Virus record (IMG/VR): IMGVR_UViG_3300030107_006644
Span: 1-64,000 of that record
Reading direction: 5' to 3' (one strand)
DNA: 64,000 bases
The translations under genes and the position numbers were made by a program. A model generated the notes under the pieces. That model was not told the DNA's origin, made no database searches, and saw nothing but the letters and a program-made list of their open reading frames with translations. Below are positions 5,582-39,830 of this stretch, piece after piece; positions within the stretch are counted from its first letter, which is position 1, and the number at the start of each line of letters is the position of its first letter.

Positions 5582-5919
5582 ATTATAAAGAAGAGCGCCC
5601 ATGGGGAACATTCGAAAATCTATTAGAAGAGAAATATTGCAAGGTAAAACAGATAGTTGTAAAGCCCGGTCATAGACTTAGCTATCAATACCACCATAGG
5701 CGTTCTGAACACTGGGTAATTGTGTGCGGTCAAGCAGTAGTGACTTTAAATGGTGAACAATCTTATCTTACCCCGGGCGAGCATATACATATACCCGTTA
5801 CAAGCAAACATCGAATTCACAACATAGGTAAAAGTGATTTGGTTTTTGTAGAGGTGCAGTGTGGTGATAACTTTGATGAGGAAGATATAGTGAGATTAGA
5901 AGATGATTATTCGCGGTAG
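5578..5919 (+). CDS. Stand-alone type II mannose-6-phosphate isomerase (cupin, ManC C-terminal-like)
   Basis: RPWG, LSYQYHHRRSEHWV, HRI.N, VEVQ.G, EEDIVRLEDDY motifs. Confidence 0.88.
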   Translation: MNYKEERPWGTFENLLEEKYCKVKQIVVKPGHRLSYQYHHRRSEHWVIVCGQAVVTLNGEQSYLTPGEHIHIPVTSKHRIHNIGKSDLVFVEVQCGDNFDEEDIVRLEDDYSR

Positions 5920-5925
5920 GCAGAA

Positions 5926-8507: not shown

Positions 8508-8513
8508 GTAATT

Positions 8514-10452: not shown

Positions 10453-11464
10453 TAAGACAGCTTTAATTACTGGCGTTACGGGCCAAGATGGTTCTTATCT
10501 AGCAGAACTGTTATTAAACAAGGGTTATCGAGTAATCGGGCTGAAGCGAAGAACTTCTTTAATTTCCACAGATCGAATAAACCACATTTATAATCATCCG
10601 GGATTTGAACTACATTACTCTAGCATGCTCGACGCCGGCTCGATGTATCGCGTTATAATGCAGGAGGAGCCAGATGAAATTTACAACCTTGCCGCACAGT
10701 CTCATGTGCGAGTGTCATTCGAAACGCCGGAAGAAACGGCACAAATTGTAGGCATGGGCACATTGCGTATATTGGAGGCAATTTTAAATATAAACCCTGA
10801 TATTAAACTTTACCAAGCTTCGTCATCAGAGATGTTCGGAGATAATCCCGCTGCTCCGCAAAGCGAAGATACGCAATTTATGCCAGCTTCTCCCTATGCG
10901 TGCTCTAAGGTTTTCGCCCACAACTTAGTACGAAACTATAGGAAGAGCTATGGTATTCATGCATCATGTGGAATTTTATTTAATCATGAGTCTCCCAGAC
11001 GAGGGGAAACCTTTGTGACGCGTAAAATTACAATGGCAGCCGCTAGAATTAAGCTGGGCCTTCAGGACAAGTTGTATTTGGGCAATCTAGATGCTAAACG
11101 CGACTGGGGCTTCGCCGGAGATTACGTGGAAGCTATGTGGAGAATGGTGCAGCAAGATACTCCTGATGACTATGTAATCGCTACAGGCGAAACACGCACG
11201 GTTAGAGAGTTTCTAGAAGCAGTGTTCAACCATGCGGACTTACAGGTCCACAAATATGTTGATATAGATAAGCGTCTTTTCCGCCCCCATGAGGTACCTC
11301 TCTTGTTGGGAGATCCCAGCAAAGCGGAAAGACAACTAAACTGGAGGCCTACAGTTACATTTAATAAATTGGCCAAAATGATGTATGAGGCAGATTTACA
11401 GCTTGTAAAAGAGCAAATTAATGGAAAGAAAGGAGTAAAAAATGACAACATACAAATTAAGTGA
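10436..11464 (+). CDS. gmd: GDP-mannose 4,6-dehydratase
   Basis: [64 protein letters not shown]. Start moved from 10238 to ATG 10436. Confidence 0.96.
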
Positions 11465-23520: not shown

Positions 23521-24240
23521 ATGTCCGATACGGTAAAAATTCCAGCTACAGTTGCCGGCCGTTTGATGGCCGCCGGCGGCTACTCTCCGGATGTAATGCC
23601 ATACGTGCAGGATAACACGACAGCTTTTTCGCAAAACCTTACTGTAAGAAGTTTAGCACTGCAGAACTTCATCAATTTACTTCTGTGTGTGCCGGGTGAA
23701 AGGATAATGGATATTAATTTTGGAGTTGGTTTAAAAACATACTTGTTTCGAATGAATGATATGACAACAAGGGAAGACTTAAGGAGCAATATTTTATCAC
23801 AAACAAGCACTTATTTGCCCTATATTACAATTAACGATATGCAAATAACCACACCAGAAGGTGAGGCAAACGCGATACATCTGGAGATTGTGTTTACAAT
23901 AACAACAACTGGCGAATCTATGTATCTTATAATTAAGGATGGAGCAGCTACACTTCTCTCTTCGCAATTGCTCACAACGGACGAGGCCGGCCGAGTCTGT
24001 TCTAGCGAAAAGGTCGCAGCTTCTATTGGTGTTGATCCTGATTCGGACAAAATGTATGTTTGGGATCCCGTGGAAGCTCAAGCAATATACGAATCGTGCG
24101 AAGAAATGGGATATAGTTCTAGTGAAGGGGAGTCTGGCACCACGGGAATTCCAATATCGGACGGATACGAGGTGGTTGTTGATCTCGAAACCGTTAGAGA
24201 GCACCTCGAAGAAATTCTGGGAGAAGGAGTAGAACCATGA
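23521..24240 (+). CDS. Baseplate wedge protein gp25/GpW-like with C-terminal extension
   Basis: NFINLLLCVPGERIMDINFGVGLKTYLF...YLPYITI signature; GAGAGG RBS. Confidence 0.85.
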   Translation: MSDTVKIPATVAGRLMAAGGYSPDVMPYVQDNTTAFSQNLTVRSLALQNFINLLLCVPGERIMDINFGVGLKTYLFRMNDMTTREDLRSNILSQTSTYLPYITINDMQITTPEGEANAIHLEIVFTITTTGESMYLIIKDGAATLLSSQLLTTDEAGRVCSSEKVAASIGVDPDSDKMYVWDPVEAQAIYESCEEMGYSSSEGESGTTGIPISDGYEVVVDLETVREHLEEILGEGVEP

Positions 24241-24259: not shown

Positions 24260-26068
24260 ATGGCTAGCAAAATAATACCGATTAAGTATACGAGCAGAGA
24301 TTTTAATTCGATTAAAGCCGATTTGGTTGAATATGCAAGGCGGTACTATCCTGACACATTCAAGGATTTTAACGAAGCCAGCTTCGGCGCACTAATGCTT
24401 GATACTGTTGCCTACGTGGGCGATGTGTTGTCGTTCTATATGGACTACCAGATTAATGAGTCTTTTATTGACACTGCGGTAGAGTATAGCAATGTGTTGC
24501 GACTGGCAAGACAACAGGGTTACAAGATTCCGGGTGCAGCATCAAGCTTTGGAGAAGTCTCCTTATATATTCTGATTCCAGCAAACAGCACAGGGCTAGG
24601 CCCCGATCCAGACTTTATACCAACATTGATGGAGGGTTCTACATTTTCTGCTCAAGGTGGAACCACCTTTTCGTTACTGGAAGACATAGATTTTTCAAAT
24701 CCAGATAATGAGGTTGTGGCCGCTAAAATAAATGAAGCGACCGGCGTGCCAACACATTATGCGATTAAAGCATACGGCAAGGTGGTGTCAGGCAGGGTTA
24801 CCTATAAGGATTACACTGTGGGCACCTTTAAGAGATTTAGAAAAATAAGAATTGGCCCGCGAAGTGTGGGAGAGGTTTTATCTGTAACGGATTCAGAAGG
24901 AAATCGCTATTATGAGGTTGGCCACTTATCACAAAACATGGTTTATGCACCGGTCGCAAACGTGTCAGACGACAGAACTACTGTGCCGAATATCATAAAG
25001 CCGCTAATAGTGCCTAGGAGGTATGTTGTTGAACGCAATGGTTCTGACTGCTTCATCCAGTTTGGACACGGCTCAGAGTCTGAATTAAATAGTCCAAGTA
25101 TTGAGGATCCGCGCTCCGTAGCAATACAAGTGCATGCTAAAAAATACACTACAGATAGAGAGTTTGACCCGAATAAATTGTTGTTTACCGATACGATGGG
25201 TATTGGTCCACAAAATACAACGATAAGAGTGACGTATAGAACCAACGGCACAGGCCGCACAGGCGCCGCAGTTAACGGGATCACCCGAGTTCAGACTCCG
25301 ATTTTTAACTTCAAGACAACCAAATCAAGCGTACTGGCTGATGCTCGATTGGGCTCTGTTAAGAAGTCGCTGGAGCTAACCAACGAAAGTGTTATTCCTT
25401 CGGCCAGTGGCAGAATCTCGACAACAGAGCTTAAGAAGAGAGTTGCAGGACATTACGCTGCGCAAAATAGAGCAGTGACAAAAGAGGATTATCTAACTTT
25501 GGTGTATACAATGCCGGCCAAATTCGGCTCAGTAAAGCGGGCGAATATATTGCGAGATCCCGACTCTTTTAAGAGAAATTTGAATCTATACATTATATCA
25601 GAAACTAATAGGGGGCACCTAACCCAATCCACCACAACGTTAAAGCAGAATATAAAAACTTGGCTAAACCAACATAGAATGCTTAGCGATACTATCGACA
25701 TTTTAGATGCGAAAATAATAAACTTTGGTATTGAATTTGAAGTCAAGGCAATGCCAAATGTAGATAAGACGGCGGTATATACTTCTTGCCGGAATATGCT
25801 GCGTGATGAACTATCAGGCCCTACTCGTATCAAGGATATTGGAGAGCCACTTTCTTTGTCGCGACTTTACACAAGGCTAAATAACATCAGAGGAGTTATG
25901 GACGTAAAAACGATTAAAGTATTGCAGAGAAGCGGTACACCATATTCTCAAGTTGTGTACGACATTAAGAGCAACATGACGGCTGACGGACAATACCTAA
26001 AGGTTCCCGACAACTGCGTAATAGAATTAAAATACCCATCTAGAGATATACAAGGAACGGTTAGATAA
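24260..26068 (+). CDS. Baseplate wedge protein, T4 gp6 / baseplate J-like
   Basis: YTSRDFNSIK..L, DFNEASFG, ESFIDTA, LARQQGYK, IQFG.G, AQNRAVTKEDY motifs; follows gp25-like gene. Confidence 0.88.
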   Translation: MASKIIPIKYTSRDFNSIKADLVEYARRYYPDTFKDFNEASFGALMLDTVAYVGDVLSFYMDYQINESFIDTAVEYSNVLRLARQQGYKIPGAASSFGEVSLYILIPANSTGLGPDPDFIPTLMEGSTFSAQGGTTFSLLEDIDFSNPDNEVVAAKINEATGVPTHYAIKAYGKVVSGRVTYKDYTVGTFKRFRKIRIGPRSVGEVLSVTDSEGNRYYEVGHLSQNMVYAPVANVSDDRTTVPNIIKPLIVPRRYVVERNGSDCFIQFGHGSESELNSPSIEDPRSVAIQVHAKKYTTDREFDPNKLLFTDTMGIGPQNTTIRVTYRTNGTGRTGAAVNGITRVQTPIFNFKTTKSSVLADARLGSVKKSLELTNESVIPSASGRISTTELKKRVAGHYAAQNRAVTKEDYLTLVYTMPAKFGSVKRANILRDPDSFKRNLNLYIISETNRGHLTQSTTTLKQNIKTWLNQHRMLSDTIDILDAKIINFGIEFEVKAMPNVDKTAVYTSCRNMLRDELSGPTRIKDIGEPLSLSRLYTRLNNIRGVMDVKTIKVLQRSGTPYSQVVYDIKSNMTADGQYLKVPDNCVIELKYPSRDIQGTVR

Positions 26069-27543
26069 TGGCTATTAAGAGATACCAAGCTGATGCTGAT
26101 ACAACCATAACGAACGCCTATCAGGATAATATGGAAACTCGCGGCACGGGCTCCAACATGGGAGGCGCAGACGTTTTAGAGACGTTTGTGATTTATGCTC
26201 AACAGAGCAGAACAAGTGTTGAATTGCAAAGAATTCTTGTGAAATTTCCTGTAGCCACGATGAGCAGCGACCGATCCTCGGGAGCGATCCCGGCTTCTGG
26301 CAGTGTTAACTTCTATTTAAAAATGTACAACGCACCACACGCCAGAACACTACCAAGCCAATATGAATTGTGGGTTTCCTCGATTTCTACAGAATGGGAC
26401 GAGGGTGTTGGCTTAGATCTAGAGACATATGAAGATCGCGGGTATGCAAACTGGATAGTTGCGAGATCGGGCTCCTCGGGAACAGGTAGCTGGACTGCAG
26501 CCGGCGGAGATTATCATAATGATGCGAAGTCTTCTTTTACTGCATCTTTTGATCTTGGAAACGAGGATATAGAATTAGACATTACCACTCTTGTTGAGCA
26601 GTGGATTAATAGTGATGGAAATGTTTTAGGCTCTAAATCGAACTACGGAGTTGGAATCAAGTTTTCGCCCACATCCGAACAAGCCGTGTCTTCTTCTTAT
26701 ACAAAAAGGTTTTTTTCAAGAAGTTCGGAATTTTTCTACAAGCGCCCGGTTATCGAAGCGCGCTGGGATTCGGCAATAAAAGATGATCGAGGCGGTTTTT
26801 ACATTAGCAGTTCCCTCGCCGGCGAAGAAAATATTAATGATATCTTCTTACACAACTACATTAGAGGCAAGCTTAGGTCGATTCCCTCATCCGAGTCTTT
26901 AATAGTTAGAATCTATTCTGGTTCCTCCGGCCCATCTGGTTTGCCGCTAGATATTAAAAATGTTAACAACAACGCAGCGACCGCTGTCTCAGCGAACGAA
27001 ATAAGTACCGGAGTGTACAAAGCGCGCCTACAGGTTACTAGTTCAATTAGTTCAACCGAATCACTATATGATGTGTGGGTTCTAGGCTCAGAAGAGGTGC
27101 ATACAGGATCCGCTATCACTCCTAAAAAATTCGATAAGGGATTTGCTTATACGGCAGCACCGTCTCCACAATATGTTGTGGCGCCAATGAATTTAAAAAG
27201 TGTTTACAGTAACGAGGAAGTTGCTAGATTTAGATTTTTTGTGCGAGAGAAGAATTGGAGCCCAACTATTTACAGCAAGGCTACGGCAACTCAGCCGTCC
27301 GCTGTTTTGGATAGTGGCTCTTTTAAGATTTTTAGGATAAGAGATGGAACAGAAGCAATTCCTTACGGTACCGGCAGTACAATGCATACTCAAATGTCGC
27401 ACGATGTTTCAGGAAGCTATTTTGATTTAGACATGGCTATGATGGAGCCGGGCTATTCGTATGGAATCCAAATTGCTTACTACAATGATATGCAGTCTAG
27501 CTGGACCGAGATACCAGACATTTATAAATTTAGAGTAGAATAA
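26068..27543 (+). CDS. Virion structural protein (DNRLRE/CBM96-like beta-sandwich N-terminus)
   Basis: ADADTTI, RILVKF, WDEG.G, W...GGD, DITTLVEQW, NYGVGIK pattern; TAATG coupling with gp6-like gene. Confidence 0.55.
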   Translation: MAIKRYQADADTTITNAYQDNMETRGTGSNMGGADVLETFVIYAQQSRTSVELQRILVKFPVATMSSDRSSGAIPASGSVNFYLKMYNAPHARTLPSQYELWVSSISTEWDEGVGLDLETYEDRGYANWIVARSGSSGTGSWTAAGGDYHNDAKSSFTASFDLGNEDIELDITTLVEQWINSDGNVLGSKSNYGVGIKFSPTSEQAVSSSYTKRFFSRSSEFFYKRPVIEARWDSAIKDDRGGFYISSSLAGEENINDIFLHNYIRGKLRSIPSSESLIVRIYSGSSGPSGLPLDIKNVNNNAATAVSANEISTGVYKARLQVTSSISSTESLYDVWVLGSEEVHTGSAITPKKFDKGFAYTAAPSPQYVVAPMNLKSVYSNEEVARFRFFVREKNWSPTIYSKATATQPSAVLDSGSFKIFRIRDGTEAIPYGTGSTMHTQMSHDVSGSYFDLDMAMMEPGYSYGIQIAYYNDMQSSWTEIPDIYKFRVE

Positions 27544-27551
27544 TAAACGTT

Positions 27552-30500
27552 ATGAGCGTAAAGAAACTTTTTGATAAAGCGAAAAAAACAAGACCGGTTG
27601 TTAAGAAACCGAACAAGCGTCTGCACGTTGATGTAGAGTCGGAAGACTTTATGGAGGCTAAGGCCGCAACGCAGGAAAGATACGACCCGCATGTAATCTA
27701 TGGCACCACGCCAATAGAAATGAAGAACTTTGTAAGATACGGCTCTGCAAAGCGGTATTTTGAAGACGCGTTCTCAAGAATCTATACAACTTATCCGTAT
27801 GACGGTTCGCTAAAAGAAAAAGAGGAATGGTCACAAACCTCAACGCCTCTTGACCGCTATATCTTCGACAATGTATATCCTAGAACAAATGGCTATATAC
27901 GAATTTCTTCTGCTGGTTGGGGCGCCCTAGGCGCTAATGGAATCACTGTTGGGTACGGACACCCAAGCACTTTAGAGTATGTTACGTTTTATGGAGGTCC
28001 TACAACGGGGTCCGCCACTAACCTGATGAAACATTTCGATCTTCAAGATCGCGGTGTTGGATCCAACATTTATGAAAGCTATAGTGAACTTTCTTCGTCG
28101 ACCGGCGGAGAGGTCGGATTAGGGACAAGAGAATCCAACCTTAAGTTTGACGTGGAAGATTTTGGTGTTACTGTAGAATTTTGGCTTAAAAAGACGGCAT
28201 TCACTACGGCTAAAACAGAGAAAGAAGTTATTTTCGACCTTTGGAACGGAGAGACCCCGGCTACTGATGGCTACGGGCGCTTAAGAATTGAGATAGATGG
28301 TACGGCAACAGGATCTCCATTTTTGGTCTCCTGCCAATCAGGATCGTCAGCCGGCTTCTCCAATGAGGTTGTCGGAACGGGCCTTACCACAACAACTCTG
28401 CAAGATTGGTCTCACTATGCGGTATCGTTAAAGGCGGACACTTCCACTAATAAAATTCGTACACGTCTGTATGTCAACGGCGTTTTGAATCAGGAACAGT
28501 CTTTAGGCACAGCGATGGGCGAAGTTACTGGCTCGCTGATTGCTAATATTGGTGCTCTCCGAGGTGCCACAACGTCTGCTACTGTTGGCACGGTAGCTGA
28601 AGGGTACGGAAAGCTTTCGGGCTCTTTGGATGAGTTTAGATATTGGAAGGCCGAGCGTGGCATTAAGGAAGTTGGTCGCCACTGGTTCAAGCAGTATGCC
28701 GGAGGCACCAACACTGATTTGTCCAACACTACGCTTGGTGTATATTATAAGTTTAACGAAGGCTGCACCGGAACGGCCTCCGTAGATCAGACAGTACTCG
28801 ATTATTCAGGCCGCCTAACAAACGGACACTGGGTTGGGTATCCGGGTTGCACAGCGCGCTGTGTTGATTCCGCTATGGTCCTCGCTGGAGCCGCAGAGCG
28901 GGAATTTAAAGATCCGATTCTGTATTCTTTTCATTCTGACGTTGCGACAAAAAAAGAGACCATTTCAAAAAATGCAAAAGCGTATGATGATAACAACAGC
29001 AGTTCGATTTATTCAACGATACCGAACTGGATTTTGGAGTTTCAAGAGAACAACACAGCCAACGATCTAGAATATCTCACTCAGATAATGGCTTCCGAGT
29101 TTGACAAGCTACATCAGCAAATTTCGGCCCTCAGCCGAGTGCGAGATAGCAGCTATCTATCTTCGACGCAAACATCGATACCGTTTACAGATAAGATGCT
29201 TACAGAGCGCGGCATGCCCGCTGCAGATATTTTTGAAAATGCAGATCTGCTAGCAAAAATTATGGGTAGATCCGAAAGTCAAGAATATGAATCAGATATT
29301 GTTGATATTAAAAATAGAATCTATCACAGCATTTATAATAATCTCAGCAACATTTTTAAATCCAAAGGCACAGAAAAGGCGTTTAGAAACCTTATACGAT
29401 GCTTTGGTGTGGACGAAAAACTATTAAAGTTAAATATCTATGGCGATAATGCGACATATAAACTAACAGATAACGCTAAAATAGTTGCCAAGAAAAGAAG
29501 GTATGCAAACTTCTACTCAAGCGGATCTGATGATGCAACAGTGGTGCAGCAGACAGCTAGCTCTAATGCCAATTCGGTTTCCTACATAACGGGTTCTAAC
29601 AACAGCTTGTACGAGCCTTATTCCGGTATGACTGTTGAAGCAGAGGTCCACTTTCCCAAGAAAAAATCAGCTTCCGATGAGGGATATTTCGCAGTCACAT
29701 ATCATACCGCATCCCTTTTCGGAATGCACACGGTTGGCGACGATCCGGCAGACTTTACATTTTTAACAGATGATTATGCAAACCTCCAAGTTTATGCGCT
29801 AAGGGATGCATCAGACAACAAGTCAGCTAGATTTATGTTAACGTCTTCATCTCCTTTCCCAATTCCAGAGATAATAACTGATTTATATAAAGATGTGTAT
29901 GAAGACCAGACATGGAACCTGTCTGTACGACTACGCCCCTCGAAGTATCCGATTTCTGACATGGTTCACGGAGCAGAAGCTGTGGCGGCTACAGCGACTA
30001 TCACCACAGTTGCCGAAGCATCAATTAATGATACTAAAGATTTTACACTAACAGACGCTGCCGGCACAACAACGACATACAACTTCTCTACAGGGCTGGC
30101 AACCACCGATAATAACGTTGCTTATACTCCGGGCGGTCAAGACGGCCGTGGACCAGCGGGCACCATTACAATTGGTGTACTCGGAACTACAACGGCCGCC
30201 GATATCCGAGATGAAATTATCACAAGGATTAATGCGGGAACCTCTATAGGTTTTGCCGCATCGGCGTCTGGTGACAATGTTCTTGTTACGCAAAATACTG
30301 CTGGCACTGCCGGAAATACATCAATTACGGAGCCAGCAGGTGCTACCGGCTTAACTCTACCGTCAACTTTTACTGGTGGGTTGGGTGCAGCCCACCCCTT
30401 TAAAGTAGAATTCCATGGCCTGCGCTTAATTGCGGGAGAAGTGATCGACGAGTTTTTGTTGACATCTTCTGCAACGCACGCGAGCGGGTCCCTATTCCTC

Positions 30501-33500
30501 CAGTCGTCAAAAAGACTTTATATGGGCGCGCATTTAACAAATTACACTGGCTCGGTAATCCAACGTTCAGATACCAGATCTTCGGGTCTGCGCTATTGGC
30601 CAATCTATTTGGGCCCCGGAGAAGATCCGTCCGTACTTTCAAGAACCAAGGATGAGTTTAAAAACAGAGTTAAAGATATCGATAATTACGGCACGTCCTA
30701 TGTTTACAGGAACGCAGGATTTTTACAAGATTCTCTGAAAGATATAGAAGTTCCGTTTGTTGAAACTCTAGCTTTAAATTGGAACTTTAGTGAGCTATCG
30801 TCCTCCAACGCCGCCGGCGAATTCACAGTCGAAGACGAATCTTCGGGTTCTTCCGATCTGTTGAATCGTTACAAATGGGTGTCGAACTTGGTAGAAAGGC
30901 AGCATACCGGTCGAGGATACAAGTTTGCTGCGTCATCTACAGACGTAATAGACATCATGTACGTCAACTCATATGCGCCGCAGCTACCCGAGACAATTTC
31001 AAGCTCGGATATGGTTAATATTTTAACGCAAGATGACGACATTTTTACGAGAGAGCATCGTCCTGTAAACTATTATTTTGCTATTGAAAAGAGCATGTAC
31101 CAAACAATATCTGAAGAGATATTAAACATGTTTGCATCAATTGTTGACTTCAATAATTTAATTGGCGATCCCGTCAATCGATATAGGCAGGAATACAAAG
31201 ATTTAGGAAAGTTGAGACAGCTGTTCTTCGAAAGAATCGGCAACACACCTGAACTAGACAAATATGTTGAATTTTACAAATGGATTGATAGCGGCATTAA
31301 TGAAATGCTAGAAGCTTTAATTCCAGCTTCGGTAAACTCCAGTGATGGTGCCAGAACAATGGTTGAAAGTCACGTTTTAGAGAGAAATAAGTATTGGAAC
31401 AAGTTCCCGACAATAGAGATGGTCGGGGATCCGCCTGCAGTTGGACTTCGCGGAATAACGGAAATGCTTTATCCGTGGAAATTTGGCCACGCTAATCCGG
31501 GAGATGTTGATTCAACCGTTGCAACCATAGAAAATGAACGTTGCTTCTGGTGGCGCGAAAGAGCAGAACGCACAACGCCGGCAAACACCAGCGGAGATTC
31601 TACAATAGACACGCAGAGAGAAGGTATAAGAGATGTTGTTGGTAAACATCGGGATGAAAGCAGGACCCTATCGCACAACGCCGGCACAACATACGCCGGA
31701 CAAACATATGCACTTAATCGGTTTAGTCGACCTTACAGGTTTGATGTAGACGAGGTTAAGGAGATTCACGGAGGCGTAAATTATCGCAAGGGTAAGGATT
31801 TAGATTTCTCAAGAACAGCAACGCATCACCACGGTGAGGATAATCCCGTAGGCTTTCCTGTTAATGTAATACTTTATGAAGATTCGAACGCTAGCGTTTT
31901 AGAAAAACAGTCAAAAGATCCGTGGTTTGATATGGCCGGCAACACAGAAGGCCGTCAGGCGACCTGCACCGATCAGGAAGATGAGTGGCCAAGATCGAAG
32001 AACAAGGTTAGCTATCATGCGTTTATTTTGAAGAATCAAGAATATTCGCCACCTCCATGGCCGCCATCGATGCCAAAAGAAGATGATGGTAATACGTATT
32101 TTTCATCGCTCAAGGGTGATTGGGCCTCACCGTTCAGCCTATACGAGACTACAGAAGAAGTTGCAGCTACAGGATATCACAAGGATATCAACGACAGATT
32201 CAGGGCAAAGACAACCATTACAAACCTGCATGAAGATTCTTACGGAGATAACGAGAGACCGGTTCAGGGTCCGTTTACCGATGCTCATGTTGGTGGTCGC
32301 CAAAATCGACACATAATTTTGAACAAGGGTGAAGACACCTACGTGGATCGGCCAGAAGCGTGGAAGTTATTAATGGGCCCCGATCTTGCTTCCTGCGGAC
32401 ACCCCTTTATATCGCCCACAGACGCCTACAAGCTTGGATTGGTCGGTCCGGACTATCCGCACCCGCTTCCGTACTCCCCGGGCGTGAAGCCCTCTACATG
32501 GCGCCCTAGAGCCAACTATTTAAGAGACGGTACAGCTAAGCGCCCCGTTAACATCCAGAACATCAAGCATGATACTGGTTCGTCAATTTTAGGCAACTAT
32601 GATAAAGACTACCAAGTGGTTAGTATCCCCGGTAGACAAATAAACAATCGTGCTTTAATCAAGTCAGGAGGATTCGAACCGATAATCGAGGATTCGTTCT
32701 ATTTTGCAGAAACTTTAAGCGAATACAGAAAGCCAGAAAGATTGAGATCCGAACATGTCTTTGTAACAAGATTCAGCGCCCCGGGAGCCCCCGAGGCCGC
32801 CGGCGACCATCGTGGCGGTTTCGGATTAGATTATAATTCTGGTGAATTCTCCTCCTATAGTTCTATGAACTATCGAAATCTTATTCTCCGTGGAGGAGGC
32901 CGATGGCCCGATGGCATCCGCGAGCTATTAACAAATCACACTAGACAGTTTGGATACTTTAGCGATCAGATGAACTTATCAAACGGCGCCGCAGCAGCAG
33001 CTGTGGCAGCTACAGCGACTATCACTACAGTTGTCGAAGCGTCAATTAATGATACTAAAGATTTTACGCTAACAGACGCTGCCGGCACAACAACGACTTA
33101 CAACTTCTCTACAGGGCTGGCAACCACCGATAATAACGTTGCTTATATCCCCGGAGGTTCAGATGGTCGCGGTCCATCAGGTACTATTACGATTGGCCTG
33201 CTCGGAACTACAACGGCCGCAGATGTCCGGGATGAAATTATCACAAGGATTAACGCCGGCACTTCTATAGGTTTTACTGCGTCTGCGTCTGGAGACAATG
33301 TTCTTGTCACGCAAAATACTGTCGGCCCTGCCGGAAATACATCAATTACAGAACCAGCAGGCGCCACCGGCTTAACTCTGCCGTCAGCTTTTACTGGCGG
33401 ATGGGGGATGTCTAGAGCATCAAGCGTTAATGCTTTTGATTATAGCGGCCAACCGAATTACCACAAGACTAATAGAAATACTGGCTATAGATTGAACAAC

Positions 33501-36500
33501 ATGCTTTCGTGTTCGAACGAGACTAGAAACTGGAACAACTGGTGTCTATATTTCCACTATGACGACGAACGCAATACTGGCGATGTTGAATCAAATTATG
33601 ATCAATGGGTGACAATTCCCGGCCGCCGGGGCCTTGGCGGGTCTCAAGGGACGTTCGACAACTTGCTCAACGGAATGCAGCCATTTGCTTTTTCTACATG
33701 GCTTAAACCCCTTGGCTCTAAATACAACTACACAGTTCCCGGCTCCAGCCCGGCGGTTAACGTACCGCACAGCAACAAGAAAAGGGTGATCTTAAACTTA
33801 GGCGACGCTTCTCAAACCGCAATCGCGCGAACCGCAACTCAGGGCGACCGTACTGATTTTGTCGGTGCCACGCTTGCAACTCAGGACGCTGAACGTATAT
33901 TCAACTTTCAAATTCACCTTGAGCCTGCCGATAACAAGGTTGCGATTATTGCTCCGTTTAGTATGGGGTATGGCCACTGGACTGTTACAGGAACCTCTAC
34001 AGATCACAGAATTAAAGATAACGAGTGGACACACTTGGTGGTTGTGTACGTACCAGATTCTTCATTAGCTGATGTTGCGCTCGATCCTACCGAAGCCAAA
34101 CTTGACACTTATACGGGTACGACATCAGGGGTCACTGATAGAACACAACAGCCAGAAGACACACTTCAGATTGGCGACGATCCGATATCGTGGGGAGCAA
34201 GCTCTATCGATAAGAGCAGTGATACACCTACGGCGCATACTAACTTGATGGCCGGAACATCTGGACAAGGATCGGTAGATGCACAAGAAGAACAAGAGAT
34301 ACGTTCAATGGGCTGGAAGGGTGACACTAAGCTGTCGACCTTCTACAAAGGAATGGCGGCTATCGACGTCGCCGTAGACAAGATGCAAAAAGTTGAAAGT
34401 CGAGCACTTGAAGGGGCCACTCCGCTTATCAAAGTATACATGAACGGCGTTTTGGTAGCCAGCTTGGATCTGGCCACCGGCGTCAATACTGGATTTTTCT
34501 TAAACAGGATGCCTTATGGTACATCGATTCCGACAGTGGGATCGGCATTTTTAGGACGAGGCCCGACCGCAATCCGTGACCTTACGCCATGGCCCGAGGA
34601 CCACCCAGATTATGTTCAACTTGGTGTCCAAGGCCAAGCGGCCCCGACAGAATGGAGCTATTACGGCCTTATGGATGAAACATCTTTTTGGGTTAAAGGG
34701 AGAGCAACAGATGCATCTATTGAACCCCTTATGCAGCAAGATGTAACTCAGATTTATCAAAATGCAGACGGCAGTAGGGGCCCCAATAACCTAAATGCTT
34801 TCCGTCCGAAAAGTAGGGGCGCCCTCATATCGTGGTACCGCTTCCACGATCAGGAGCCGCCACACGTTTCTCGTTTCGATAGGATTACCGGTTATGGCCA
34901 ACTCAATCATTTGCCCAACCAAATTAATGATAATAAAGATTGGGGACTCTCTCGCTTTCACGCCTATACCTCCCCAACTTATCCTAATGCCGCCGTTCAC
35001 CGGCCAATTCGTGGAGGGTTTTCCGCTTCTACGGATCTCCCGGGAGAACAATACATCAATGAGTACTGCACACCAGTCACGTCCGCATATTACGACAATT
35101 GGTATGTAACACATGAAATACCCAGATCTACTGCACAGTATACTTGGATTTCACAATCTTGCGAGAGAGATGCATCAGGCTCCGCATTAGACGAGCTAGG
35201 AAACGCCGTTTGGCATCATCCTCCGCCGCATGGTAAGGTGCATGTGCACGACCCAACTTCAGAAGATTACCTAAAGCAATATAATGCCATATCTTTCACC
35301 ATAGAGAGTCATGTTGGATCGGCTTATTCTACCGCGACTGGCAAACGCCACTGGAACGATAGCGCAGGAAATGGCTCGCACACCCGCGAATCCGTGGCCG
35401 CCGTAGCTGCCTTGCGAGATTTTATTCCACAATCGTTCGCTCAACTCAACACAAACCTCTACGAATCGTTGAATGTTTCGACACAAGCGTTAGGTCTAAA
35501 CCAAGATGAATCTGATTTTATAAATGATGATGTCGTCAACTTTGGTGCTAATGATAGTGGCGGTTCGGCCGTTCTAAACGGGTTGGTGTTGAAGCGTCAA
35601 GGTCCGTATGGCTGGCCGTCTTGGAAACAAATTAGAGGTTCGGAACACCCAGTGGTCCGAAGACACCTTAAAAATAGCAGCGTGCTATCGATAGTGCAGC
35701 CACCAGAAGAAAAATATTTATATTCTGGTTCCGCCGTCATTGGTTCGTATTTTGGCCTTCCACGCGGCGATAACTTTGTTCAATATACGGAACCGGCAAT
35801 TGCATACAAAAAGCCAATGGTGCACGTCCTTCAAGACTCTATTGTGCTTATGCATGCTTATTCTAACGCTATCGATAAATTTTCAAATCAAAATATAAAC
35901 AATTTTCTAAATCTTAGAACCGATGAGCCATGCGCATATACAAACTTAGTCGAGGAATATACAGGCGAAGATCCAACTCTTAAGTTTAATTACTTGAGAT
36001 ATCACGAGCCGGTGTATCCAAAGCAAGTCAACCGATATAGAAATATTATTAGAAGTAGACCAAACTACGCAACCAGTTTCTATCAGTCAGGTCGTTCCAA
36101 CCGTAAGCCAATATTATGGGCACCAGAAGATCCCATGGGCCAACTTGACTGGAAGATACGGAATACAGAAACGCCTGTTTTGGTAGACACGATTATTAAT
36201 GTTACCAATTCTCAAGGGTATACAATGATTCACGCTGCTAAATGGGCTACCAATATAGGGGGAGCCGCAGCTACTGTTGGTCATATGGCTGGGTATATCA
36301 CGGGAAGCATCGGAGCCCACAGTATTTGGCCAATGGACGCGAGAGGAGACTTTCACACCATCACCAACGTGCTGGGTGAATCTTCCGTGCCTGATTTAGC
36401 TGTTCGAGAAGCCGGATATCCAATTAGGGAATATGTTGGATGCACCTCTGCCAACACCACCCCGGGGAACTACCCGCTTTGGTCTGGCTCTTGTGATTCT

Positions 36501-39500
36501 GATGCCTTTACTAAGAGCCACTATATAAGCGAACTATGCGGCGAGCTTCAGGCATACTTTGTGCAGGCTAGAGGCGCATCGACCACATATTATAATTGCG
36601 TAGATGGAGCTACACCGCCCGGCACCGATACAAATGGTGAACCGACCTTCGAGCCGCTAATTCCGCATGCACAATATCACCGTAGACACACAACAAGACT
36701 ATCTTCGTCCTTTCACTCGCTTTCGGGGTACAAGCATGGCATTTCCTCCAATCAGTGGAACTCGGGTTCGCACCCAAGAGGAATCTGGACGCGCGACTCA
36801 ATTGCTGACGCATCCGAATGGCAAACTAGATACGGGCTTGTTGCTGGCTCCTATATGAGCGGAGCCCTTCCATGGCACTTTGTTGATCGTATTGATTCAG
36901 GAATACGGGGACAGTGGCTCTACGGAGGCCAAACCATGTGGGAGGCCGATATACAATCCGGCAAACGACCCGCTTACGATAGTTATGAACAGTTTGCATA
37001 TGAGGATATTAGACTAAAAGGTCAGGAATATTCTACAGTACCAGAGTTTAAAATTAGTGATCATATCGCAAAGTATGTTAGTTTAAGAAATTCTGACTTC
37101 CTATCAGACAACGACACACTGTTTTCGCTTTCCGGCTCAAGTATTCGGGATAGCAGCGAAGACGGGTTTTATACCACCTATAGTCATAGTGATTTTATGA
37201 AGCATTTTGAGGTTATAGCTGGAGATCACGCTGATGTCACTGAAGGCCCATCTGAGTTAAAACTTCGTTGCACTGGAATAAAGAAATTTTTACCATATGA
37301 CGGAGTTTACCCAATGCAGAGAAGCTTGCAGTTGGCAACGCTGTTCTCTAGATCTTATGCAGACAATGTTTATCTCGTAGAGGGCTCGGGCTCTTCACAA
37401 ATTGATTTCGGTGCAGGCTACAGATCGAGCATACATGGTGGTGCCGGCACCGCTGCAGACTACTATGATGAGGATGCAATCAAGCAGGGAGCTTGGTCGG
37501 TATACATGAGGCCTTTCTTCGCCCCCGGTATTTTGTATAACACAGTGAAATCAGGAGTAGCAGTAGACTTTCCAGTTATGACTGGTTCGTTTCATATGAC
37601 TTCTTCTACGCCGTTAGCAATTAGTGGAAAACACGATGGAAGTTCCGGCTCGCCCTCTCACAATTGGGATAGTTACGATATTGACGAGAAAGAAATTTTT
37701 ACAGTCACAACGGATATCATAGCTGAGCCAAGATTTCATGATAGAATACCTTTTGAGGCGATTATCGAGCCCGACAAGCACGTTGTCGGTATGCCAATTG
37801 TTAATATGGAAACTCACGTCTCGGGCGCCGGAAACGTCTATGGACAAGTGAATGGTTGTGCGGAAAACATGGGATCGTATAATCGCACGCTGTCCATTAC
37901 TGCCTCGCTGGCCGCCCCCGGTGGCAATCTTTATAAAATGGCATCAAATAACTTTTTTGCAGAAAGTATCGACTTTTTCCTTCAAGATCGGCGTCTTTCA
38001 GCAATATCCTCTTTGCCTGAAAGCGATCCAAACTTTGGTGTAGTGTCTGAGGCTGATGCTGAGAAAAAGTTTATGGCCTTGGTTAAGATTCGCAAAAGCG
38101 TCGAACGCCAACAGAATTTCAACCCTCTTACTGGTGCTCTCGTCTCTACTGCAGATGGCAAGACATACCCTTATATAAATATGCCTTTGATGACGGATAC
38201 TCCAATCCCGCATCCGTGGACATTATCTAAGGAGACCATCACGATGTATAGCCGTCCTAGCGCTTTCGGCCCGCCGTCCATGGGAATGTGGAGTTCTATT
38301 AGTGGGTACAACATGCCTTATACTCCGCCATATTACGACGGTGCAGCTTGGGCAATTTTAACCTTTAGTCCGGGCGAATACTCCGGCGCTAAAAAATATA
38401 CACTGGACGAGATTCTGGCCGCCACCACAATTGAATATACTAGAACTGGAAAAGTTTATGTAGAGCATGGACCTGATGCATCCGGTAAGGCATTTGGAGC
38501 AACCACTGTTAGCAACTGGCCTTGGTCGCTTCCATGTTCGTATCCGCATGCCCGCGCAACCTTCTCTCTAAGTCACATAACTAACCTACTTGATACCAAT
38601 AGCTCTGGACGGTTTAAGGACTTTGTGGAGATGGTTGATCCTTATCCGCAAGGAAGGACTTTTATAGACGATAATGCAATGCAGATTAGCGCCTCTGTTA
38701 ATCTAATGCAAAAATCTCGCCTTAAAGCGGCAGAGTATAATGCGCTTACAGGAAGAAAGGTTCTGGTGACAGATTCGCCAAACGCAGAACTAGCTACATG
38801 GGTTATCCAAACAAAGTACGAGACTCCAATATTAAACTTTGGAGATGCGGACAAGACCGAAACAAAAACTGTAGCAGGCGATGCGACTAATCTTTGGGGT
38901 AATGAACTTTCCGCCAAGGGCATGTGGCATCAGTACGGAGTTTTACCATCAAGCGATGAGGACGGTATCTTCTTAGAAATTCAAGATGTTCCGAAAAAGT
39001 ATCTTAGAAAAGGAATGGGAATTGAGCCGAACGAGGTAAAATCTTTATGTGATTTGGTAGGATTCTCTACCGAGCCTGTAAAGATTGGTCAGCCGGCCGT
39101 AAGTAGGACCATCTCTGAAGCAGTGGTGGCCGTACCGTTCGTTGAAAAGGATGGAGAAAGGCAGTTCTTTAATGTTCCGCGAAGAACTATCGACTTGGCA
39201 GCTGGTTTGGATGATGTGACGGATGAGGATAGAGAATCCAATACGGTACCGGGAGACAGCATAGTCGACATGGTTGATAAGATGAACAAGTTTGTATTTC
39301 CTCCGACTATGAATTTCTTACTATATGACTCCATTGAGCCCTTCGCGATGTATATTTTTGAATTTACGCACGAGCTTTCCCAAATGGATCTTACCGACAT
39401 GTGGCAAAATCTCATGCCAGAAATTGGTCGTACCTTTGAAGAGCAAACTGTAGAGGTATCACATCCGTTGTTCTCTAACGAGGTTATGGGGTGTGAAGCG

Positions 39501-39830
39501 CTACTGAGCGGCCAAAAGGTTCAAAAAGAACTTCAATGGATGGTCTTCAAGGTCAAACAAAAGGCAAAGACAAACTATTACGAAAAGGTAATTGGTTCTG
39601 ATCTTGAAAAATATGACTTCCTGCAGATAAAACCGGGAGTGTTGAGTAAGCGCAACAATTCTTCATCTGGCTATAGTTATAACTGGCCGTATGACTATTT
39701 CTCACTAGTCGAGTTGGTCAAGATAGATTCGGAAGTTACGTTTGGGGCGATTCCGGAACCAGACGCGGTAAAGGAAAGTATAAAGGTGCGGGATTTAGCA
39801 GAATTGGTAAAATTAGAAGAGGATGAATAG
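27552..39830 (+). CDS. Giant (4092 aa) baseplate wedge/gp7-like protein with multiple LamG/concanavalin-A-like domains
   Basis: IFKSKGTEKAFRNLIRCFG (K.KGT wedge motif); LamG hallmarks TVEFWLK, WSHYAV, LYVNG, SGSLDEFRYW and again FSTWLKP, WTHLVVVY, VYMNG, GLMDETSFW; internal duplicated module. Confidence 0.7.
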   Translation: MSVKKLFDKAKKTRPVVKKPNKRLHVDVESEDFMEAKAATQERYDPHVIYGTTPIEMKNFVRYGSAKRYFEDAFSRIYTTYPYDGSLKEKEEWSQTSTPLDRYIFDNVYPRTNGYIRISSAGWGALGANGITVGYGHPSTLEYVTFYGGPTTGSATNLMKHFDLQDRGVGSNIYESYSELSSSTGGEVGLGTRESNLKFDVEDFGVTVEFWLKKTAFTTAKTEKEVIFDLWNGETPATDGYGRLRIEIDGTATGSPFLVSCQSGSSAGFSNEVVGTGLTTTTLQDWSHYAVSLKADTSTNKIRTRLYVNGVLNQEQSLGTAMGEVTGSLIANIGALRGATTSATVGTVAEGYGKLSGSLDEFRYWKAERGIKEVGRHWFKQYAGGTNTDLSNTTLGVYYKFNEGCTGTASVDQTVLDYSGRLTNGHWVGYPGCTARCVDSAMVLAGAAEREFKDPILYSFHSDVATKKETISKNAKAYDDNNSSSIYSTIPNWILEFQENNTANDLEYLTQIMASEFDKLHQQISALSRVRDSSYLSSTQTSIPFTDKMLTERGMPAADIFENADLLAKIMGRSESQEYESDIVDIKNRIYHSIYNNLSNIFKSKGTEKAFRNLIRCFGVDEKLLKLNIYGDNATYKLTDNAKIVAKKRRYANFYSSGSDDATVVQQTASSNANSVSYITGSNNSLYEPYSGMTVEAEVHFPKKKSASDEGYFAVTYHTASLFGMHTVGDDPADFTFLTDDYANLQVYALRDASDNKSARFMLTSSSPFPIPEIITDLYKDVYEDQTWNLSVRLRPSKYPISDMVHGAEAVAATATITTVAEASINDTKDFTLTDAAGTTTTYNFSTGLATTDNNVAYTPGGQDGRGPAGTITIGVLGTTTAADIRDEIITRINAGTSIGFAASASGDNVLVTQNTAGTAGNTSITEPAGATGLTLPSTFTGGLGAAHPFKVEFHGLRLIAGEVIDEFLLTSSATHASGSLFLQSSKRLYMGAHLTNYTGSVIQRSDTRSSGLRYWPIYLGPGEDPSVLSRTKDEFKNRVKDIDNYGTSYVYRNAGFLQDSLKDIEVPFVETLALNWNFSELSSSNAAGEFTVEDESSGSSDLLNRYKWVSNLVERQHTGRGYKFAASSTDVIDIMYVNSYAPQLPETISSSDMVNILTQDDDIFTREHRPVNYYFAIEKSMYQTISEEILNMFASIVDFNNLIGDPVNRYRQEYKDLGKLRQLFFERIGNTPELDKYVEFYKWIDSGINEMLEALIPASVNSSDGARTMVESHVLERNKYWNKFPTIEMVGDPPAVGLRGITEMLYPWKFGHANPGDVDSTVATIENERCFWWRERAERTTPANTSGDSTIDTQREGIRDVVGKHRDESRTLSHNAGTTYAGQTYALNRFSRPYRFDVDEVKEIHGGVNYRKGKDLDFSRTATHHHGEDNPVGFPVNVILYEDSNASVLEKQSKDPWFDMAGNTEGRQATCTDQEDEWPRSKNKVSYHAFILKNQEYSPPPWPPSMPKEDDGNTYFSSLKGDWASPFSLYETTEEVAATGYHKDINDRFRAKTTITNLHEDSYGDNERPVQGPFTDAHVGGRQNRHIILNKGEDTYVDRPEAWKLLMGPDLASCGHPFISPTDAYKLGLVGPDYPHPLPYSPGVKPSTWRPRANYLRDGTAKRPVNIQNIKHDTGSSILGNYDKDYQVVSIPGRQINNRALIKSGGFEPIIEDSFYFAETLSEYRKPERLRSEHVFVTRFSAPGAPEAAGDHRGGFGLDYNSGEFSSYSSMNYRNLILRGGGRWPDGIRELLTNHTRQFGYFSDQMNLSNGAAAAAVAATATITTVVEASINDTKDFTLTDAAGTTTTYNFSTGLATTDNNVAYIPGGSDGRGPSGTITIGLLGTTTAADVRDEIITRINAGTSIGFTASASGDNVLVTQNTVGPAGNTSITEPAGATGLTLPSAFTGGWGMSRASSVNAFDYSGQPNYHKTNRNTGYRLNNMLSCSNETRNWNNWCLYFHYDDERNTGDVESNYDQWVTIPGRRGLGGSQGTFDNLLNGMQPFAFSTWLKPLGSKYNYTVPGSSPAVNVPHSNKKRVILNLGDASQTAIARTATQGDRTDFVGATLATQDAERIFNFQIHLEPADNKVAIIAPFSMGYGHWTVTGTSTDHRIKDNEWTHLVVVYVPDSSLADVALDPTEAKLDTYTGTTSGVTDRTQQPEDTLQIGDDPISWGASSIDKSSDTPTAHTNLMAGTSGQGSVDAQEEQEIRSMGWKGDTKLSTFYKGMAAIDVAVDKMQKVESRALEGATPLIKVYMNGVLVASLDLATGVNTGFFLNRMPYGTSIPTVGSAFLGRGPTAIRDLTPWPEDHPDYVQLGVQGQAAPTEWSYYGLMDETSFWVKGRATDASIEPLMQQDVTQIYQNADGSRGPNNLNAFRPKSRGALISWYRFHDQEPPHVSRFDRITGYGQLNHLPNQINDNKDWGLSRFHAYTSPTYPNAAVHRPIRGGFSASTDLPGEQYINEYCTPVTSAYYDNWYVTHEIPRSTAQYTWISQSCERDASGSALDELGNAVWHHPPPHGKVHVHDPTSEDYLKQYNAISFTIESHVGSAYSTATGKRHWNDSAGNGSHTRESVAAVAALRDFIPQSFAQLNTNLYESLNVSTQALGLNQDESDFINDDVVNFGANDSGGSAVLNGLVLKRQGPYGWPSWKQIRGSEHPVVRRHLKNSSVLSIVQPPEEKYLYSGSAVIGSYFGLPRGDNFVQYTEPAIAYKKPMVHVLQDSIVLMHAYSNAIDKFSNQNINNFLNLRTDEPCAYTNLVEEYTGEDPTLKFNYLRYHEPVYPKQVNRYRNIIRSRPNYATSFYQSGRSNRKPILWAPEDPMGQLDWKIRNTETPVLVDTIINVTNSQGYTMIHAAKWATNIGGAAATVGHMAGYITGSIGAHSIWPMDARGDFHTITNVLGESSVPDLAVREAGYPIREYVGCTSANTTPGNYPLWSGSCDSDAFTKSHYISELCGELQAYFVQARGASTTYYNCVDGATPPGTDTNGEPTFEPLIPHAQYHRRHTTRLSSSFHSLSGYKHGISSNQWNSGSHPRGIWTRDSIADASEWQTRYGLVAGSYMSGALPWHFVDRIDSGIRGQWLYGGQTMWEADIQSGKRPAYDSYEQFAYEDIRLKGQEYSTVPEFKISDHIAKYVSLRNSDFLSDNDTLFSLSGSSIRDSSEDGFYTTYSHSDFMKHFEVIAGDHADVTEGPSELKLRCTGIKKFLPYDGVYPMQRSLQLATLFSRSYADNVYLVEGSGSSQIDFGAGYRSSIHGGAGTAADYYDEDAIKQGAWSVYMRPFFAPGILYNTVKSGVAVDFPVMTGSFHMTSSTPLAISGKHDGSSGSPSHNWDSYDIDEKEIFTVTTDIIAEPRFHDRIPFEAIIEPDKHVVGMPIVNMETHVSGAGNVYGQVNGCAENMGSYNRTLSITASLAAPGGNLYKMASNNFFAESIDFFLQDRRLSAISSLPESDPNFGVVSEADAEKKFMALVKIRKSVERQQNFNPLTGALVSTADGKTYPYINMPLMTDTPIPHPWTLSKETITMYSRPSAFGPPSMGMWSSISGYNMPYTPPYYDGAAWAILTFSPGEYSGAKKYTLDEILAATTIEYTRTGKVYVEHGPDASGKAFGATTVSNWPWSLPCSYPHARATFSLSHITNLLDTNSSGRFKDFVEMVDPYPQGRTFIDDNAMQISASVNLMQKSRLKAAEYNALTGRKVLVTDSPNAELATWVIQTKYETPILNFGDADKTETKTVAGDATNLWGNELSAKGMWHQYGVLPSSDEDGIFLEIQDVPKKYLRKGMGIEPNEVKSLCDLVGFSTEPVKIGQPAVSRTISEAVVAVPFVEKDGERQFFNVPRRTIDLAAGLDDVTDEDRESNTVPGDSIVDMVDKMNKFVFPPTMNFLLYDSIEPFAMYIFEFTHELSQMDLTDMWQNLMPEIGRTFEEQTVEVSHPLFSNEVMGCEALLSGQKVQKELQWMVFKVKQKAKTNYYEKVIGSDLEKYDFLQIKPGVLSKRNNSSSGYSYNWPYDYFSLVELVKIDSEVTFGAIPEPDAVKESIKVRDLAELVKLEEDE
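29979..30379 (+). repeat. Direct repeat copy 1 (~400 bp, 134-aa module AVAATATITT...FTGG)
   Basis: Aligns without gaps to 33000-33400 (offset 3021 nt, in frame); about 10 amino-acid differences, most nucleotide changes synonymous. Confidence 0.95.
33000..33400 (+). repeat. Direct repeat copy 2 of the 134-aa module
   Basis: See copy 1 at 29979-30379. Confidence 0.95.

What the first reader, a model, noticed from the sequence alone, without database searches (positions are those of the whole stretch)
29979..33400. A 134-aa plug-in domain copied to two distant sites in one giant baseplate protein
Seen: ungapped ~400-bp repeat 3021 nt apart with sharp edges (AVAATATITT...LPSxFTGG), unrelated flanks, about 10 aa changes and mostly synonymous substitutions. 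Copy 1 interrupts a LamG-like domain between LSVRLRP and FKVEFHG; copy 2 follows an Ala run. Inference: a module whose termini lie close together so it can drop into surface loops, recently duplicated or homogenised by gene conversion and under purifying selection. It may be a mobile decoration or adhesion domain. Recombination between copies would delete 1007 codons in frame.
Basis: partly seen in the sequence, partly recalled or inferred. Interest (0 to 1): 0.6.

Follow-up and report, generated by a model that had tools for sequence, protein, structure and literature searches.

The report
Sheath-type plug-in domain duplicated in baseplate giant
A 134-residue surface domain of the kind that normally sticks out of phage tail sheaths has been copied into two loops of one 4092-residue baseplate-region protein of an uncultured marine jumbo phage. 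Relatives carry it at other loops, in the sheath, alone, or not at all, so it is a real movable decoration module. It is not a new kind of system.

Summary
Two ungapped copies (window 29973-30386 and 32994-33407) lie 3021 nt, or 1007 codons, apart in one ORF (27552-39830, 4092 aa). They are 87-88% identical in DNA and about 91-92% in protein, with dN/dS 0.12-0.17 and dS 0.33-0.44.

The module is a discrete domain family with no Pfam, PHROG or NCBIfam model. A profile search found 73 cluster representatives in 1.84 billion proteins. A third, diverged copy sits in this phage's own tail sheath gene, outside the window.

The predicted fold (pLDDT 91.8) and weak sequence matches tie it to the external D3/InD/SED domain of about-500-aa tail sheaths, a known insertion domain.

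In the homologues fetched, site 1 is empty in 51 of the 54 metagenome loci that cover it, and site 2 is empty in all nine aligned. Modules occupy at least six mapped loops. Copies resemble their genome-mates, not their site-mates (AU test p about 1e-68). The same loops carry LamG or beta-propeller inserts in other phages.

The function (decoration, adhesion or fibre docking) is inferred. The "LamG-like host domain" was not confirmed. Reads could not be examined. This is a new variant of a known kind, of moderate interest.

The parts
27552..39830 (+). Giant ORF (4092 aa, P0001), the host of both module copies. It is a conserved scaffold shared with more than 70 metagenomic phage loci. The conserved blocks are residues 1-807, 950-1805, about 2500-2950 and about 3120-4065. 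Residues 1806-2500 are lineage-specific.
29973..30386 (+). Module copy 1 (residues 808-945, 134-aa core 810-943), inserted at 'site 1' in a loop between two predicted strands.
32994..33407 (+). Module copy 2 (residues 1815-1952), inserted at 'site 2' just after the last widely conserved N-terminal block. This site is occupied only in this genome among the homologues fetched.
28164..28658 (+). Laminin_G_3 domain (residues 205-369), the only Pfam match in the giant protein. It is not the domain that copy 1 interrupts.
31491..31523 (+). 'Site 3' loop (residues about 1314-1324), empty here. It holds a module in L026, L019/L020, L016, L060, L069, L073 and L091, and a LamG domain in L023.
23521..24240 (+). 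gp25-like baseplate wedge / sheath initiator gene.
   Evidence: PF04965 E 7.5e-8; phrog_261 E 7.4e-13
24260..26068 (+). gp6-like (J-like) baseplate wedge gene.
   Evidence: (phrog_219 E 7.5e-25)
26068..27543 (+). 491-aa ORF between the gp6-like gene and the giant gene. It has no family match and is part of the same co-directional tail gene block.

Best explanation
The repeat is two copies of an autonomously folding, surface-exposed alpha/beta domain. This domain is the same kind as the external 'D3' domain of contractile tail sheaths, also called the insertion domain (InD) or sheath extension domain (SED).

In this lineage of uncultured marine jumbo myoviruses the domain behaves as a cassette. 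It sits in permissive surface loops of a giant protein encoded in the baseplate gene block, in the tail sheath, in tandem arrays, and in small stand-alone proteins.

In the window's phage one cassette was most likely copied from one loop of the giant protein into a second loop 1007 codons away, after the split from its nearest sampled relative, which has neither copy. Both copies have since been kept under purifying selection, with at least one partial gene-conversion patch.

Because the domain enters and leaves through neighbouring ends, as it does in sheaths, it can be spliced into a loop without disturbing the host fold.

The likely role is to display an extra interaction surface on the outside of the tail. 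Candidates are docking of fibres, as described for some sheath D3 domains, or weak binding to the host surface.

Shown: the repeat, the domain family, the fold, the empty sites, the multiple sites, and selection. Inferred: the copy-paste direction and mechanism, adjacency of the termini, surface exposure, and function.
For: - Repeat and selection.
- Domain family: a 3-copy profile finds 73 cluster representatives (13 at E<=1e-10) in hosts of 74-3470 aa, matched over the whole module length, single or in tandem. No Pfam, PHROG or NCBIfam model covers it.
- Third copy: it lies in this phage's 1164-aa tail sheath at G000:95207-95542. That sheath segment hits the module of another phage's giant protein at 48% identity, E 2e-12.
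- Fold: the model has pLDDT 91.8 and pTM 0.88. The best solved matches are the outer domains of the A-1(L), Mu, XM1, PhiTE and E217 sheaths (Z 7.3-8.3). They span the module end to end and map to sheath residues about 85-218. FliD D2/D3 follows at Z 6-7.
- Sequence link: the 57-sequence profile hits Milano gp20 residues 90-174 (E 5e-4) and the 7-7-1 sheath (E 3e-3). One family member hits phrog_165 'tail sheath' at positions 99-206.
- Literature: Milano SED is residues 91-203, inserted in the body domain (PMC10811340). XM1 InD resembles FliD D3 (PMC10457771). D3 is non-conserved, external, and docks fibres in some phages (PMC11972413).
- Empty sites: site 1 flanks are contiguous (gap -1 to 15 aa) in 51 of 54 metagenome loci and in most IMG/VR homologues. 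Site 2 is contiguous in all nine homologues aligned.
- Other sites: modules occupy at least four further mapped loops in relatives.
- Copies track genomes, not sites: WIN s1-s2 are 92% identical and L026 s1-s3 75%, but WIN s1 and L026 s1 only 41%. The tree places them in different strongly supported clades, and the AU test rejects a same-site clade (delta lnL 150, p about 1e-68).
- Backbone tree: the sister of the window protein, L007, has no module in its giant protein. Its genome encodes a 206-aa stand-alone module protein.
- Other cargo in the same loops: a DUF5050/YWTD-type insert at site 1 in L085 and Laminin_G_3 at site 3 in L023.
- BFVD: 18 viral proteins match at E<=1e-3, including J-like baseplate proteins, sheaths and small proteins.
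Against: - The function is untested. The family's near-invariant residues (G-x-x-G-N, F-x-G-G, an N-terminal Ala) look structural, so no binding site is evident.
- Structural Z scores of 7-8 are in the range the tool warns can reflect a common arrangement, and the sequence links to sheaths are weak (E 5e-4 to 8e-5).
- The N-to-C distance and surface exposure were not measured.
- The baseplate location of the giant protein rests only on gene order. The backbone has no match in PDB, Pfam or PHROGs.
- No relative closer than about 52% identity was found, so the timing and direction of the duplication cannot be resolved.
- Reads could not be inspected.
- The AU group was named after the tree had been seen.
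Confidence: 0.72

Rival explanations
1. Ancient occupancy with concerted evolution. The modules were present at several loops in the ancestor of the giant-protein family. Most lineages lost them precisely. Within each genome the remaining copies were homogenised by gene conversion, so the 92% identity reflects conversion rather than a new insertion.
For: Site 1 is occupied at the same loop position in three distant members: the window, L026 and L091. Differences between the two window copies are significantly patchy: 4.7% over the first 150 nt and 30% over the next 60 nt, including synonymous sites (p 0.003). Patches like this are what conversion tracts produce. In L026 the two copies are also each other's closest relatives.
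Against: It needs many independent, clean, in-frame losses. Site 1 is empty in 51 of 54 loci, and the sister L007 is empty at every site. Site 2 is occupied in no other homologue. Site 3 holds modules of different subfamilies in different phages, and the loops also hold unrelated cargo. Both facts fit repeated gain better.
Confidence: 0.2
2. Two independent horizontal acquisitions. Each window copy was imported separately from other phages, for example from a donor with the L005/P0002-type module, rather than one being copied from the other.
For: The nearest non-self modules (P0002 at 82%, L005 site 4 at 74%) sit at yet another loop in a different clade of the backbone tree. Modules therefore do cross between backbones or sites.
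Against: The two window copies are closer to each other (92% aa, path 0.15) than either is to any of the 73 database representatives or the copies in other loci. Their DNA similarity ends exactly at the module edges at both sites.
Confidence: 0.05
3. Assembly artefact. The metagenomic assembler joined or duplicated a repeat wrongly, and the real genome has one copy.
For: The record is a metagenome-assembled viral contig, and read-level checks could not be run.
Against: The copies differ at 54 of 417 positions in a codon-aware pattern. Both are in frame in one uninterrupted 4092-codon ORF. The 2.6 kb between them is collinear with the contiguous homologous region of more than 20 independent contigs. 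Independent assemblies, L026 and L091, also carry two or three modules in one gene.
Confidence: 0.03

Closest known systems
External domain of contractile tail sheath proteins: D3 (phiTE), insertion domain InD (XM1 gp6), sheath extension domain SED (Milano gp20 residues 91-203)
   Same: The alpha/beta fold is the same (Z 7.3-8.3, with the module aligned end to end to sheath residues about 85-218). Weak but significant sequence matches include the G-x-x-G-N motif. Like the sheath domain, it is an insert within another domain, external, non-conserved and present or absent between relatives (PMC11972413). One copy in this genome is in the sheath.
   Different: The two window copies are not in a sheath. 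They are in a 4092-aa protein of the baseplate gene block, twice, at loops unrelated to the sheath body domain. The family also occurs alone and in tandem arrays. Even the sheath copy sits inside a large multi-domain extension of an 1164-aa sheath, not at the canonical position of a roughly 500-aa sheath.
FliD (flagellar cap) D2/D3 and flagellin outer domains
   Same: Similar fold (Z 6-7). These are also outward-facing, variable insert domains on a helical assembly. The XM1 authors noted the same resemblance for the sheath InD (PMC10457771).
   Different: No sequence similarity was detected. They belong to bacterial flagellar proteins, not phage tail proteins. No evidence here bears on common descent.
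Promiscuous decoration domains of phage virions (Ig-like, BACON, fibronectin-type domains on tail, head and fibre proteins). This comparison rests on my own knowledge of the literature and was not checked with the tools.
   Same: The evolutionary behaviour is the same: small, autonomous domains scattered sporadically over different structural proteins, gained and lost between close relatives, and thought to mediate weak surface binding.
   Different: The fold is alpha/beta, not an Ig-like beta sandwich. The insertion is internal, into loops, rather than mostly terminal. No frameshift-dependent addition is seen.

Membership tests
Tail sheath external domain (D3 / InD / SED) | Alpha/beta fold superposable on the external domain of solved sheaths | tested here: met
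   Model pLDDT 91.8. VIA-align gives Z 8.3 (A-1(L)), 8.0 (Mu), 7.9 (XM1), 7.6 (PhiTE) and 7.3 (E217), all mapping to sheath residues about 85-218. Foldseek gives probability 1.0 for the Milano sheath, but E 7.7e-3 and TM 0.5. The strength is moderate.
Tail sheath external domain (D3 / InD / SED) | Detectable sequence homology to sheath external domains | tested here: met
   The 57-sequence profile hits Milano gp20 residues 90-174 at E 5.3e-4 and the 7-7-1 sheath at E 3e-3. Family member P0013 hits phrog_165 'tail sheath' at positions 99-206 of 493, E 7.9e-5. The match is weak, but it falls in the right place.
Tail sheath external domain (D3 / InD / SED) | Located in a sheath protein, inserted into the sheath body / N-terminal domain | tested here: not met
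   Both window copies are in the giant ORF 27552-39830, which has no sheath domains. Only the third, diverged copy, outside the window, is in the sheath. The window copies work like D3 and are probably homologous to it, but they are not sheath domains.
Tail sheath external domain (D3 / InD / SED) | N and C termini adjacent, so the domain is a loop insert | not testable with these tools
   The tools return no model coordinates. The feature is inferred from end-to-end alignment to sheath inserts, from Milano SED 91-203 lying between body-domain segments 24-90 and 204-380 (PMC10811340), and from clean empty-site alignments.
   Pfam LamG covers only residues 205-369. None of 16 empty-site homologues of the host region hits LamG at E<=1. 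hhalign of host versus LamG profiles gives probability 2.9%, although the aligned stretch looks like the LamG C-terminal motif. The host-domain model is too poor to search, with host-region pLDDT mostly below 60 and under 50 over long stretches.
Intein or other self-splicing / selfish in-frame element | Splicing residues at both junctions (Cys/Ser/Thr first residue, His-Asn end, nucleophile at +1) and a Hint fold | tested here: not met
   The module starts A-V-A-A-T and ends F-T-G-G, followed by L or W. The fold is sheath-D3-like, not Hint. No Pfam intein match was found.
T4-type baseplate wedge module (gp25-gp6-gp7 ...) as the context of the giant protein | The giant protein is itself homologous to a known baseplate protein | tested here: not met
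   The upstream genes match gp25 and gp6, but the giant protein has no PHROG, Pfam (other than LamG) or PDB sequence match. The 'baseplate' label rests on gene order only.

The most novel reading that the evidence does not exclude
The giant protein family may be a display scaffold with a set of defined 'cargo slots' (at least six mapped loops). Interchangeable surface domains would be repeatedly written into these slots in frame: the sheath-D3-like cassette in three subfamilies, LamG, and beta-propeller. The D3-like cassette would be a so far unnamed, widely mobile phage domain that moves between sheath, baseplate and free-standing genes. This would give marine jumbo phages a modular way to re-tool the outside of the tail. 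A regular insertion mechanism, for example microhomology at G/A-rich linkers, would make this more than ordinary domain shuffling.
Probability: 0.2. Interest if true: 0.65.

Novelty: new variant of a known kind. Interest (0 to 1): 0.45.

Why it matters
The external D3 domain of tail sheaths has so far been described, in the papers read here, as a non-conserved accessory of sheaths with scattered roles: disulfide locking in Milano and fibre docking in phiTE and A-1(L).

This locus shows the same kind of domain acting as a portable cassette. It is written into several loops of a giant baseplate-region protein, into the sheath, and into small free proteins. Clean empty sites and genome-specific copies give a natural experiment on where a tail protein tolerates inserts.

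The family has no database model, so a profile built from the alignment made here would annotate many 'hypothetical' phage structural proteins. The permissive loops and the compact, well-folding module are also practical leads for displaying foreign domains on phage tails.

It does not reveal a new type of biological system.

Tried and rejected
- **Reads.** Neither the assembly nor deletion-junction reads could be checked. I did not try to reach reads by another route.
- **Cultured relatives.** blastn and tblastn of the giant gene, its N-terminus and the module against 50,697 GenBank phage records found nothing.
- **Families for the module.** Pfam, PHROGs and NCBIfam gave no match. The PDB sequence search with the 3-copy profile found nothing. 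Only the deeper 57-sequence profile reached sheaths.
- **ESM Atlas by features.** The nearest clusters were unnamed hypothetical proteins, which was uninformative.
- **Host domain of copy 1.** The AlphaFold model of residues 590-1115 was poor outside the module (mean pLDDT 58.7), so it was not fold-searched. hhalign against the LamG region, Pfam on 16 homologues and a PDB profile search gave no support.
- **Closer relatives.** The metagenome scan found none above 52% identity, so no species-level empty-site alleles are available.
- **Target-site duplication.** GG(A/T)GCA flanks the module at site 1, but nothing comparable is present at site 2. I do not treat it as evidence.
- **Intein or selfish element.** Rejected on junction residues and fold.
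- **My first reading of site 2.** I initially took the L005 and L006 copies near site 2 to be orthologous to window copy 2. The alignment showed they lie at a different loop, upstream of the R-F-S-A-P-G-G motif.
Full report
**Context.** The window is the first 64 kb of a 205,517-bp IMG/VR virus record rated 100% complete. Genes run co-directionally. A gp25-like gene (23521-24240) and a gp6-like gene (24260-26068) are followed by a 491-aa ORF and then a 4092-aa ORF, 27552-39830. The only Pfam match in the giant protein is Laminin_G_3 at residues 205-369. Its 'baseplate' label therefore rests on gene order alone. No cultured phage in GenBank resembles it.

**Observation.** The repeat is real.
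- It covers 29973-30386 and 32994-33407, offset by 3021 nt (1007 codons), without gaps and with sharp edges.
- Of 139 codons compared, 33 differ only synonymously and 13 change the residue. dN/dS is 0.12-0.17 and dS is 0.33-0.44.
- Both copies are therefore under purifying selection, and the duplication is not very young.
- Differences are unevenly spread: 7 in the first 150 nt and 18 in the next 60 nt, many of them synonymous (codon-shuffle p 0.003). This fits a later partial gene-conversion patch.

**A third copy.** A search of the whole genome found a diverged copy at G000:95207-95542 (33% identity, full length).
- It lies in an 1164-aa ORF with Phage_sheath_1 and Phage_sheath_1C domains, followed by a tube-like gene. 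This is the tail sheath.
- The sheath segment matches the module of another phage's giant protein at 48% identity, E 2e-12, which is independent support.
- A profile scan of all six frames found no fourth copy.

**A domain family.** A profile of the three copies, run against 1.84 billion representatives, gave 73 hits at E<=1e-3.
- Nearly all cover the whole module. The hosts range from 74 to 3470 aa, with the module at any position, single or in tandem runs of up to five.
- Hosts with other domains include LamG (7) and sheaths (2).
- Sources are mostly marine metagenomes, and no source gives a functional name.
- Some short hosts may be gene fragments. Complete stand-alone genes do exist, however: L032 (206 aa), P0013 (259 aa) and P0018 (407 aa, four modules).
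- No Pfam, PHROG or NCBIfam model covers the module.

**Fold and kinship.** With a 57-sequence alignment the module folds confidently (pLDDT 91.8, pTM 0.88).
- The best solved matches are the outer domains of roughly 500-aa tail sheaths: A-1(L) Z 8.3, Mu 8.0, XM1 7.9, PhiTE 7.6 and E217 7.3.
- Each match spans the module end to end and maps to sheath residues about 85-218. FliD D2/D3 and flagellin outer domains follow.
- The tool warns that Z of 7-8 can be a common arrangement, but sequence agrees. The profile hits Milano gp20 residues 90-174 (E 5e-4) and the 7-7-1 sheath (E 3e-3), sharing the G-x-x-G-N motif. One member hits phrog_165 'tail sheath' at positions 99-206.
- Papers call this sheath domain SED (Milano residues 91-203, inserted in the body domain; PMC10811340), InD (XM1, noted as FliD-D3-like; PMC10457771) or D3 (phiTE; PMC11972413).
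- The phiTE paper describes D3 as non-conserved and external, sometimes docking tail fibres and sometimes locking the sheath.
- BFVD adds 18 viral proteins at E<=1e-3, including J-like baseplate proteins, sheaths and small proteins.

**Empty sites and many sites.** I fetched 24 IMG/VR loci and 57 metagenome loci that encode homologues of the giant protein.
- Site 1: the flanks are contiguous in nearly all homologues, with a gap of -1 to 15 aa in 51 of 54 metagenome loci, against 140 aa here. Only the window, L026 and L091 hold a module there. L085 holds a 296-aa DUF5050/YWTD-type insert instead.
- Site 2: all nine homologues aligned run straight through, including the sister L007.
- Other loops in relatives:
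  - about residue 740 of the window protein (L022, L005);
  - about residue 1318 (L026, L019/L020, L016 and others, with L023 carrying a LamG domain there);
  - about residue 1375 (L005/P0002);
  - just upstream of residue 1735 (L005, L006).
- Three relatives' sheaths lack the module.

**History.**
- Copies resemble their genome-mates, not their site-mates. The window's two copies are 92% identical and L026's two copies 75%, but the window and L026 copies at site 1 are only 41% identical.
- A maximum-likelihood tree puts them in different strongly supported clades. An AU test rejects a same-site clade (delta lnL 150, p about 1e-68). The caveat is that the group was named after the tree had been seen.
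- Site 3 holds modules of different subfamilies in different phages.
- On the backbone tree the window's sister is L007 (support 100). L007 has no module in its giant protein but has a stand-alone module gene elsewhere in its genome.
- The simplest reading is repeated gain into permissive loops. In the window's lineage this means an intragenic copy-paste after the split from L007, followed by some conversion.
- Old inserts with many clean losses plus homogenisation remains possible.

**Function.** Nothing here tests function. The near-invariant residues look structural. I infer an outward-facing interaction or decoration surface from three things: the homology to external sheath domains, the company it keeps in the same slots (LamG and beta-propeller), and purifying selection. 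Recombination between the two copies would remove the conserved block 950-1805, so such a deletion would probably be selected against.

**Limits.**
- No model coordinates are returned, so the N-to-C distance is inferred.
- The host-domain model was poor, and the LamG-like host claim is unconfirmed.
- No relative closer than 52% identity was found.
No human-like, toxin or animal-virus sequence and no alternative genetic code was involved.

Noticed in passing
window 869-11464: A run of sugar-metabolism genes lies just upstream of the tail genes: two glycosyltransferases (phrog_2170), a phosphoheptose-isomerase-containing protein and a nucleotide-sugar epimerase (phrog_540). The module is 23% Thr. 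Virion glycosylation is conceivable but untested.
   Followed up: no
L085:3074-4030 and L023:11120-11860: The loops that hold the module elsewhere carry unrelated cargo in these phages. L085 has a roughly 296-aa insert at site 1 with DUF5050 / LDL-receptor class B hits. L023 has a Laminin_G_3 domain at site 3 (E 3.7e-21).
   Followed up: partly
L032:1378-2259 and L037:8001-9485: In two unrelated contigs a stand-alone module gene (206 aa, and 407 aa with four modules) is followed immediately by an 85-aa coiled-coil ORF. This may be a conserved gene pair.
   Followed up: no
window 15087-23465: A second giant ORF (2792 aa) lies directly upstream of the gp25-like gene. It has no Pfam or PHROG match and no module copy.
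   Followed up: no
G000:C1:93527-97021 (outside the window; L004:5528-9022): The tail sheath is unusually long, 1164 aa against 951-1038 aa in relatives. Its extension holds the third module copy at residues about 556-683, and three relatives lack this copy.
   Followed up: partly
window 34908-34941: A 34-nt stretch inside the giant ORF is 83% identical to the start of the module (E 8.6e-4). It is probably a chance match of Ala/Thr-rich coding sequence.
   Followed up: no
window 29970-29975 and 30381-30389: A GG(A/T)GCA hexamer occurs at both edges of copy 1. Nothing comparable is present at copy 2. It is too weak to call a target-site duplication.
   Followed up: partly
window 32970-34800 (giant protein residues about 1806-2500): The roughly 700-residue stretch that begins at site 2 has almost no counterpart in any fetched homologue. 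It is a lineage-specific segment between conserved blocks.
   Followed up: no
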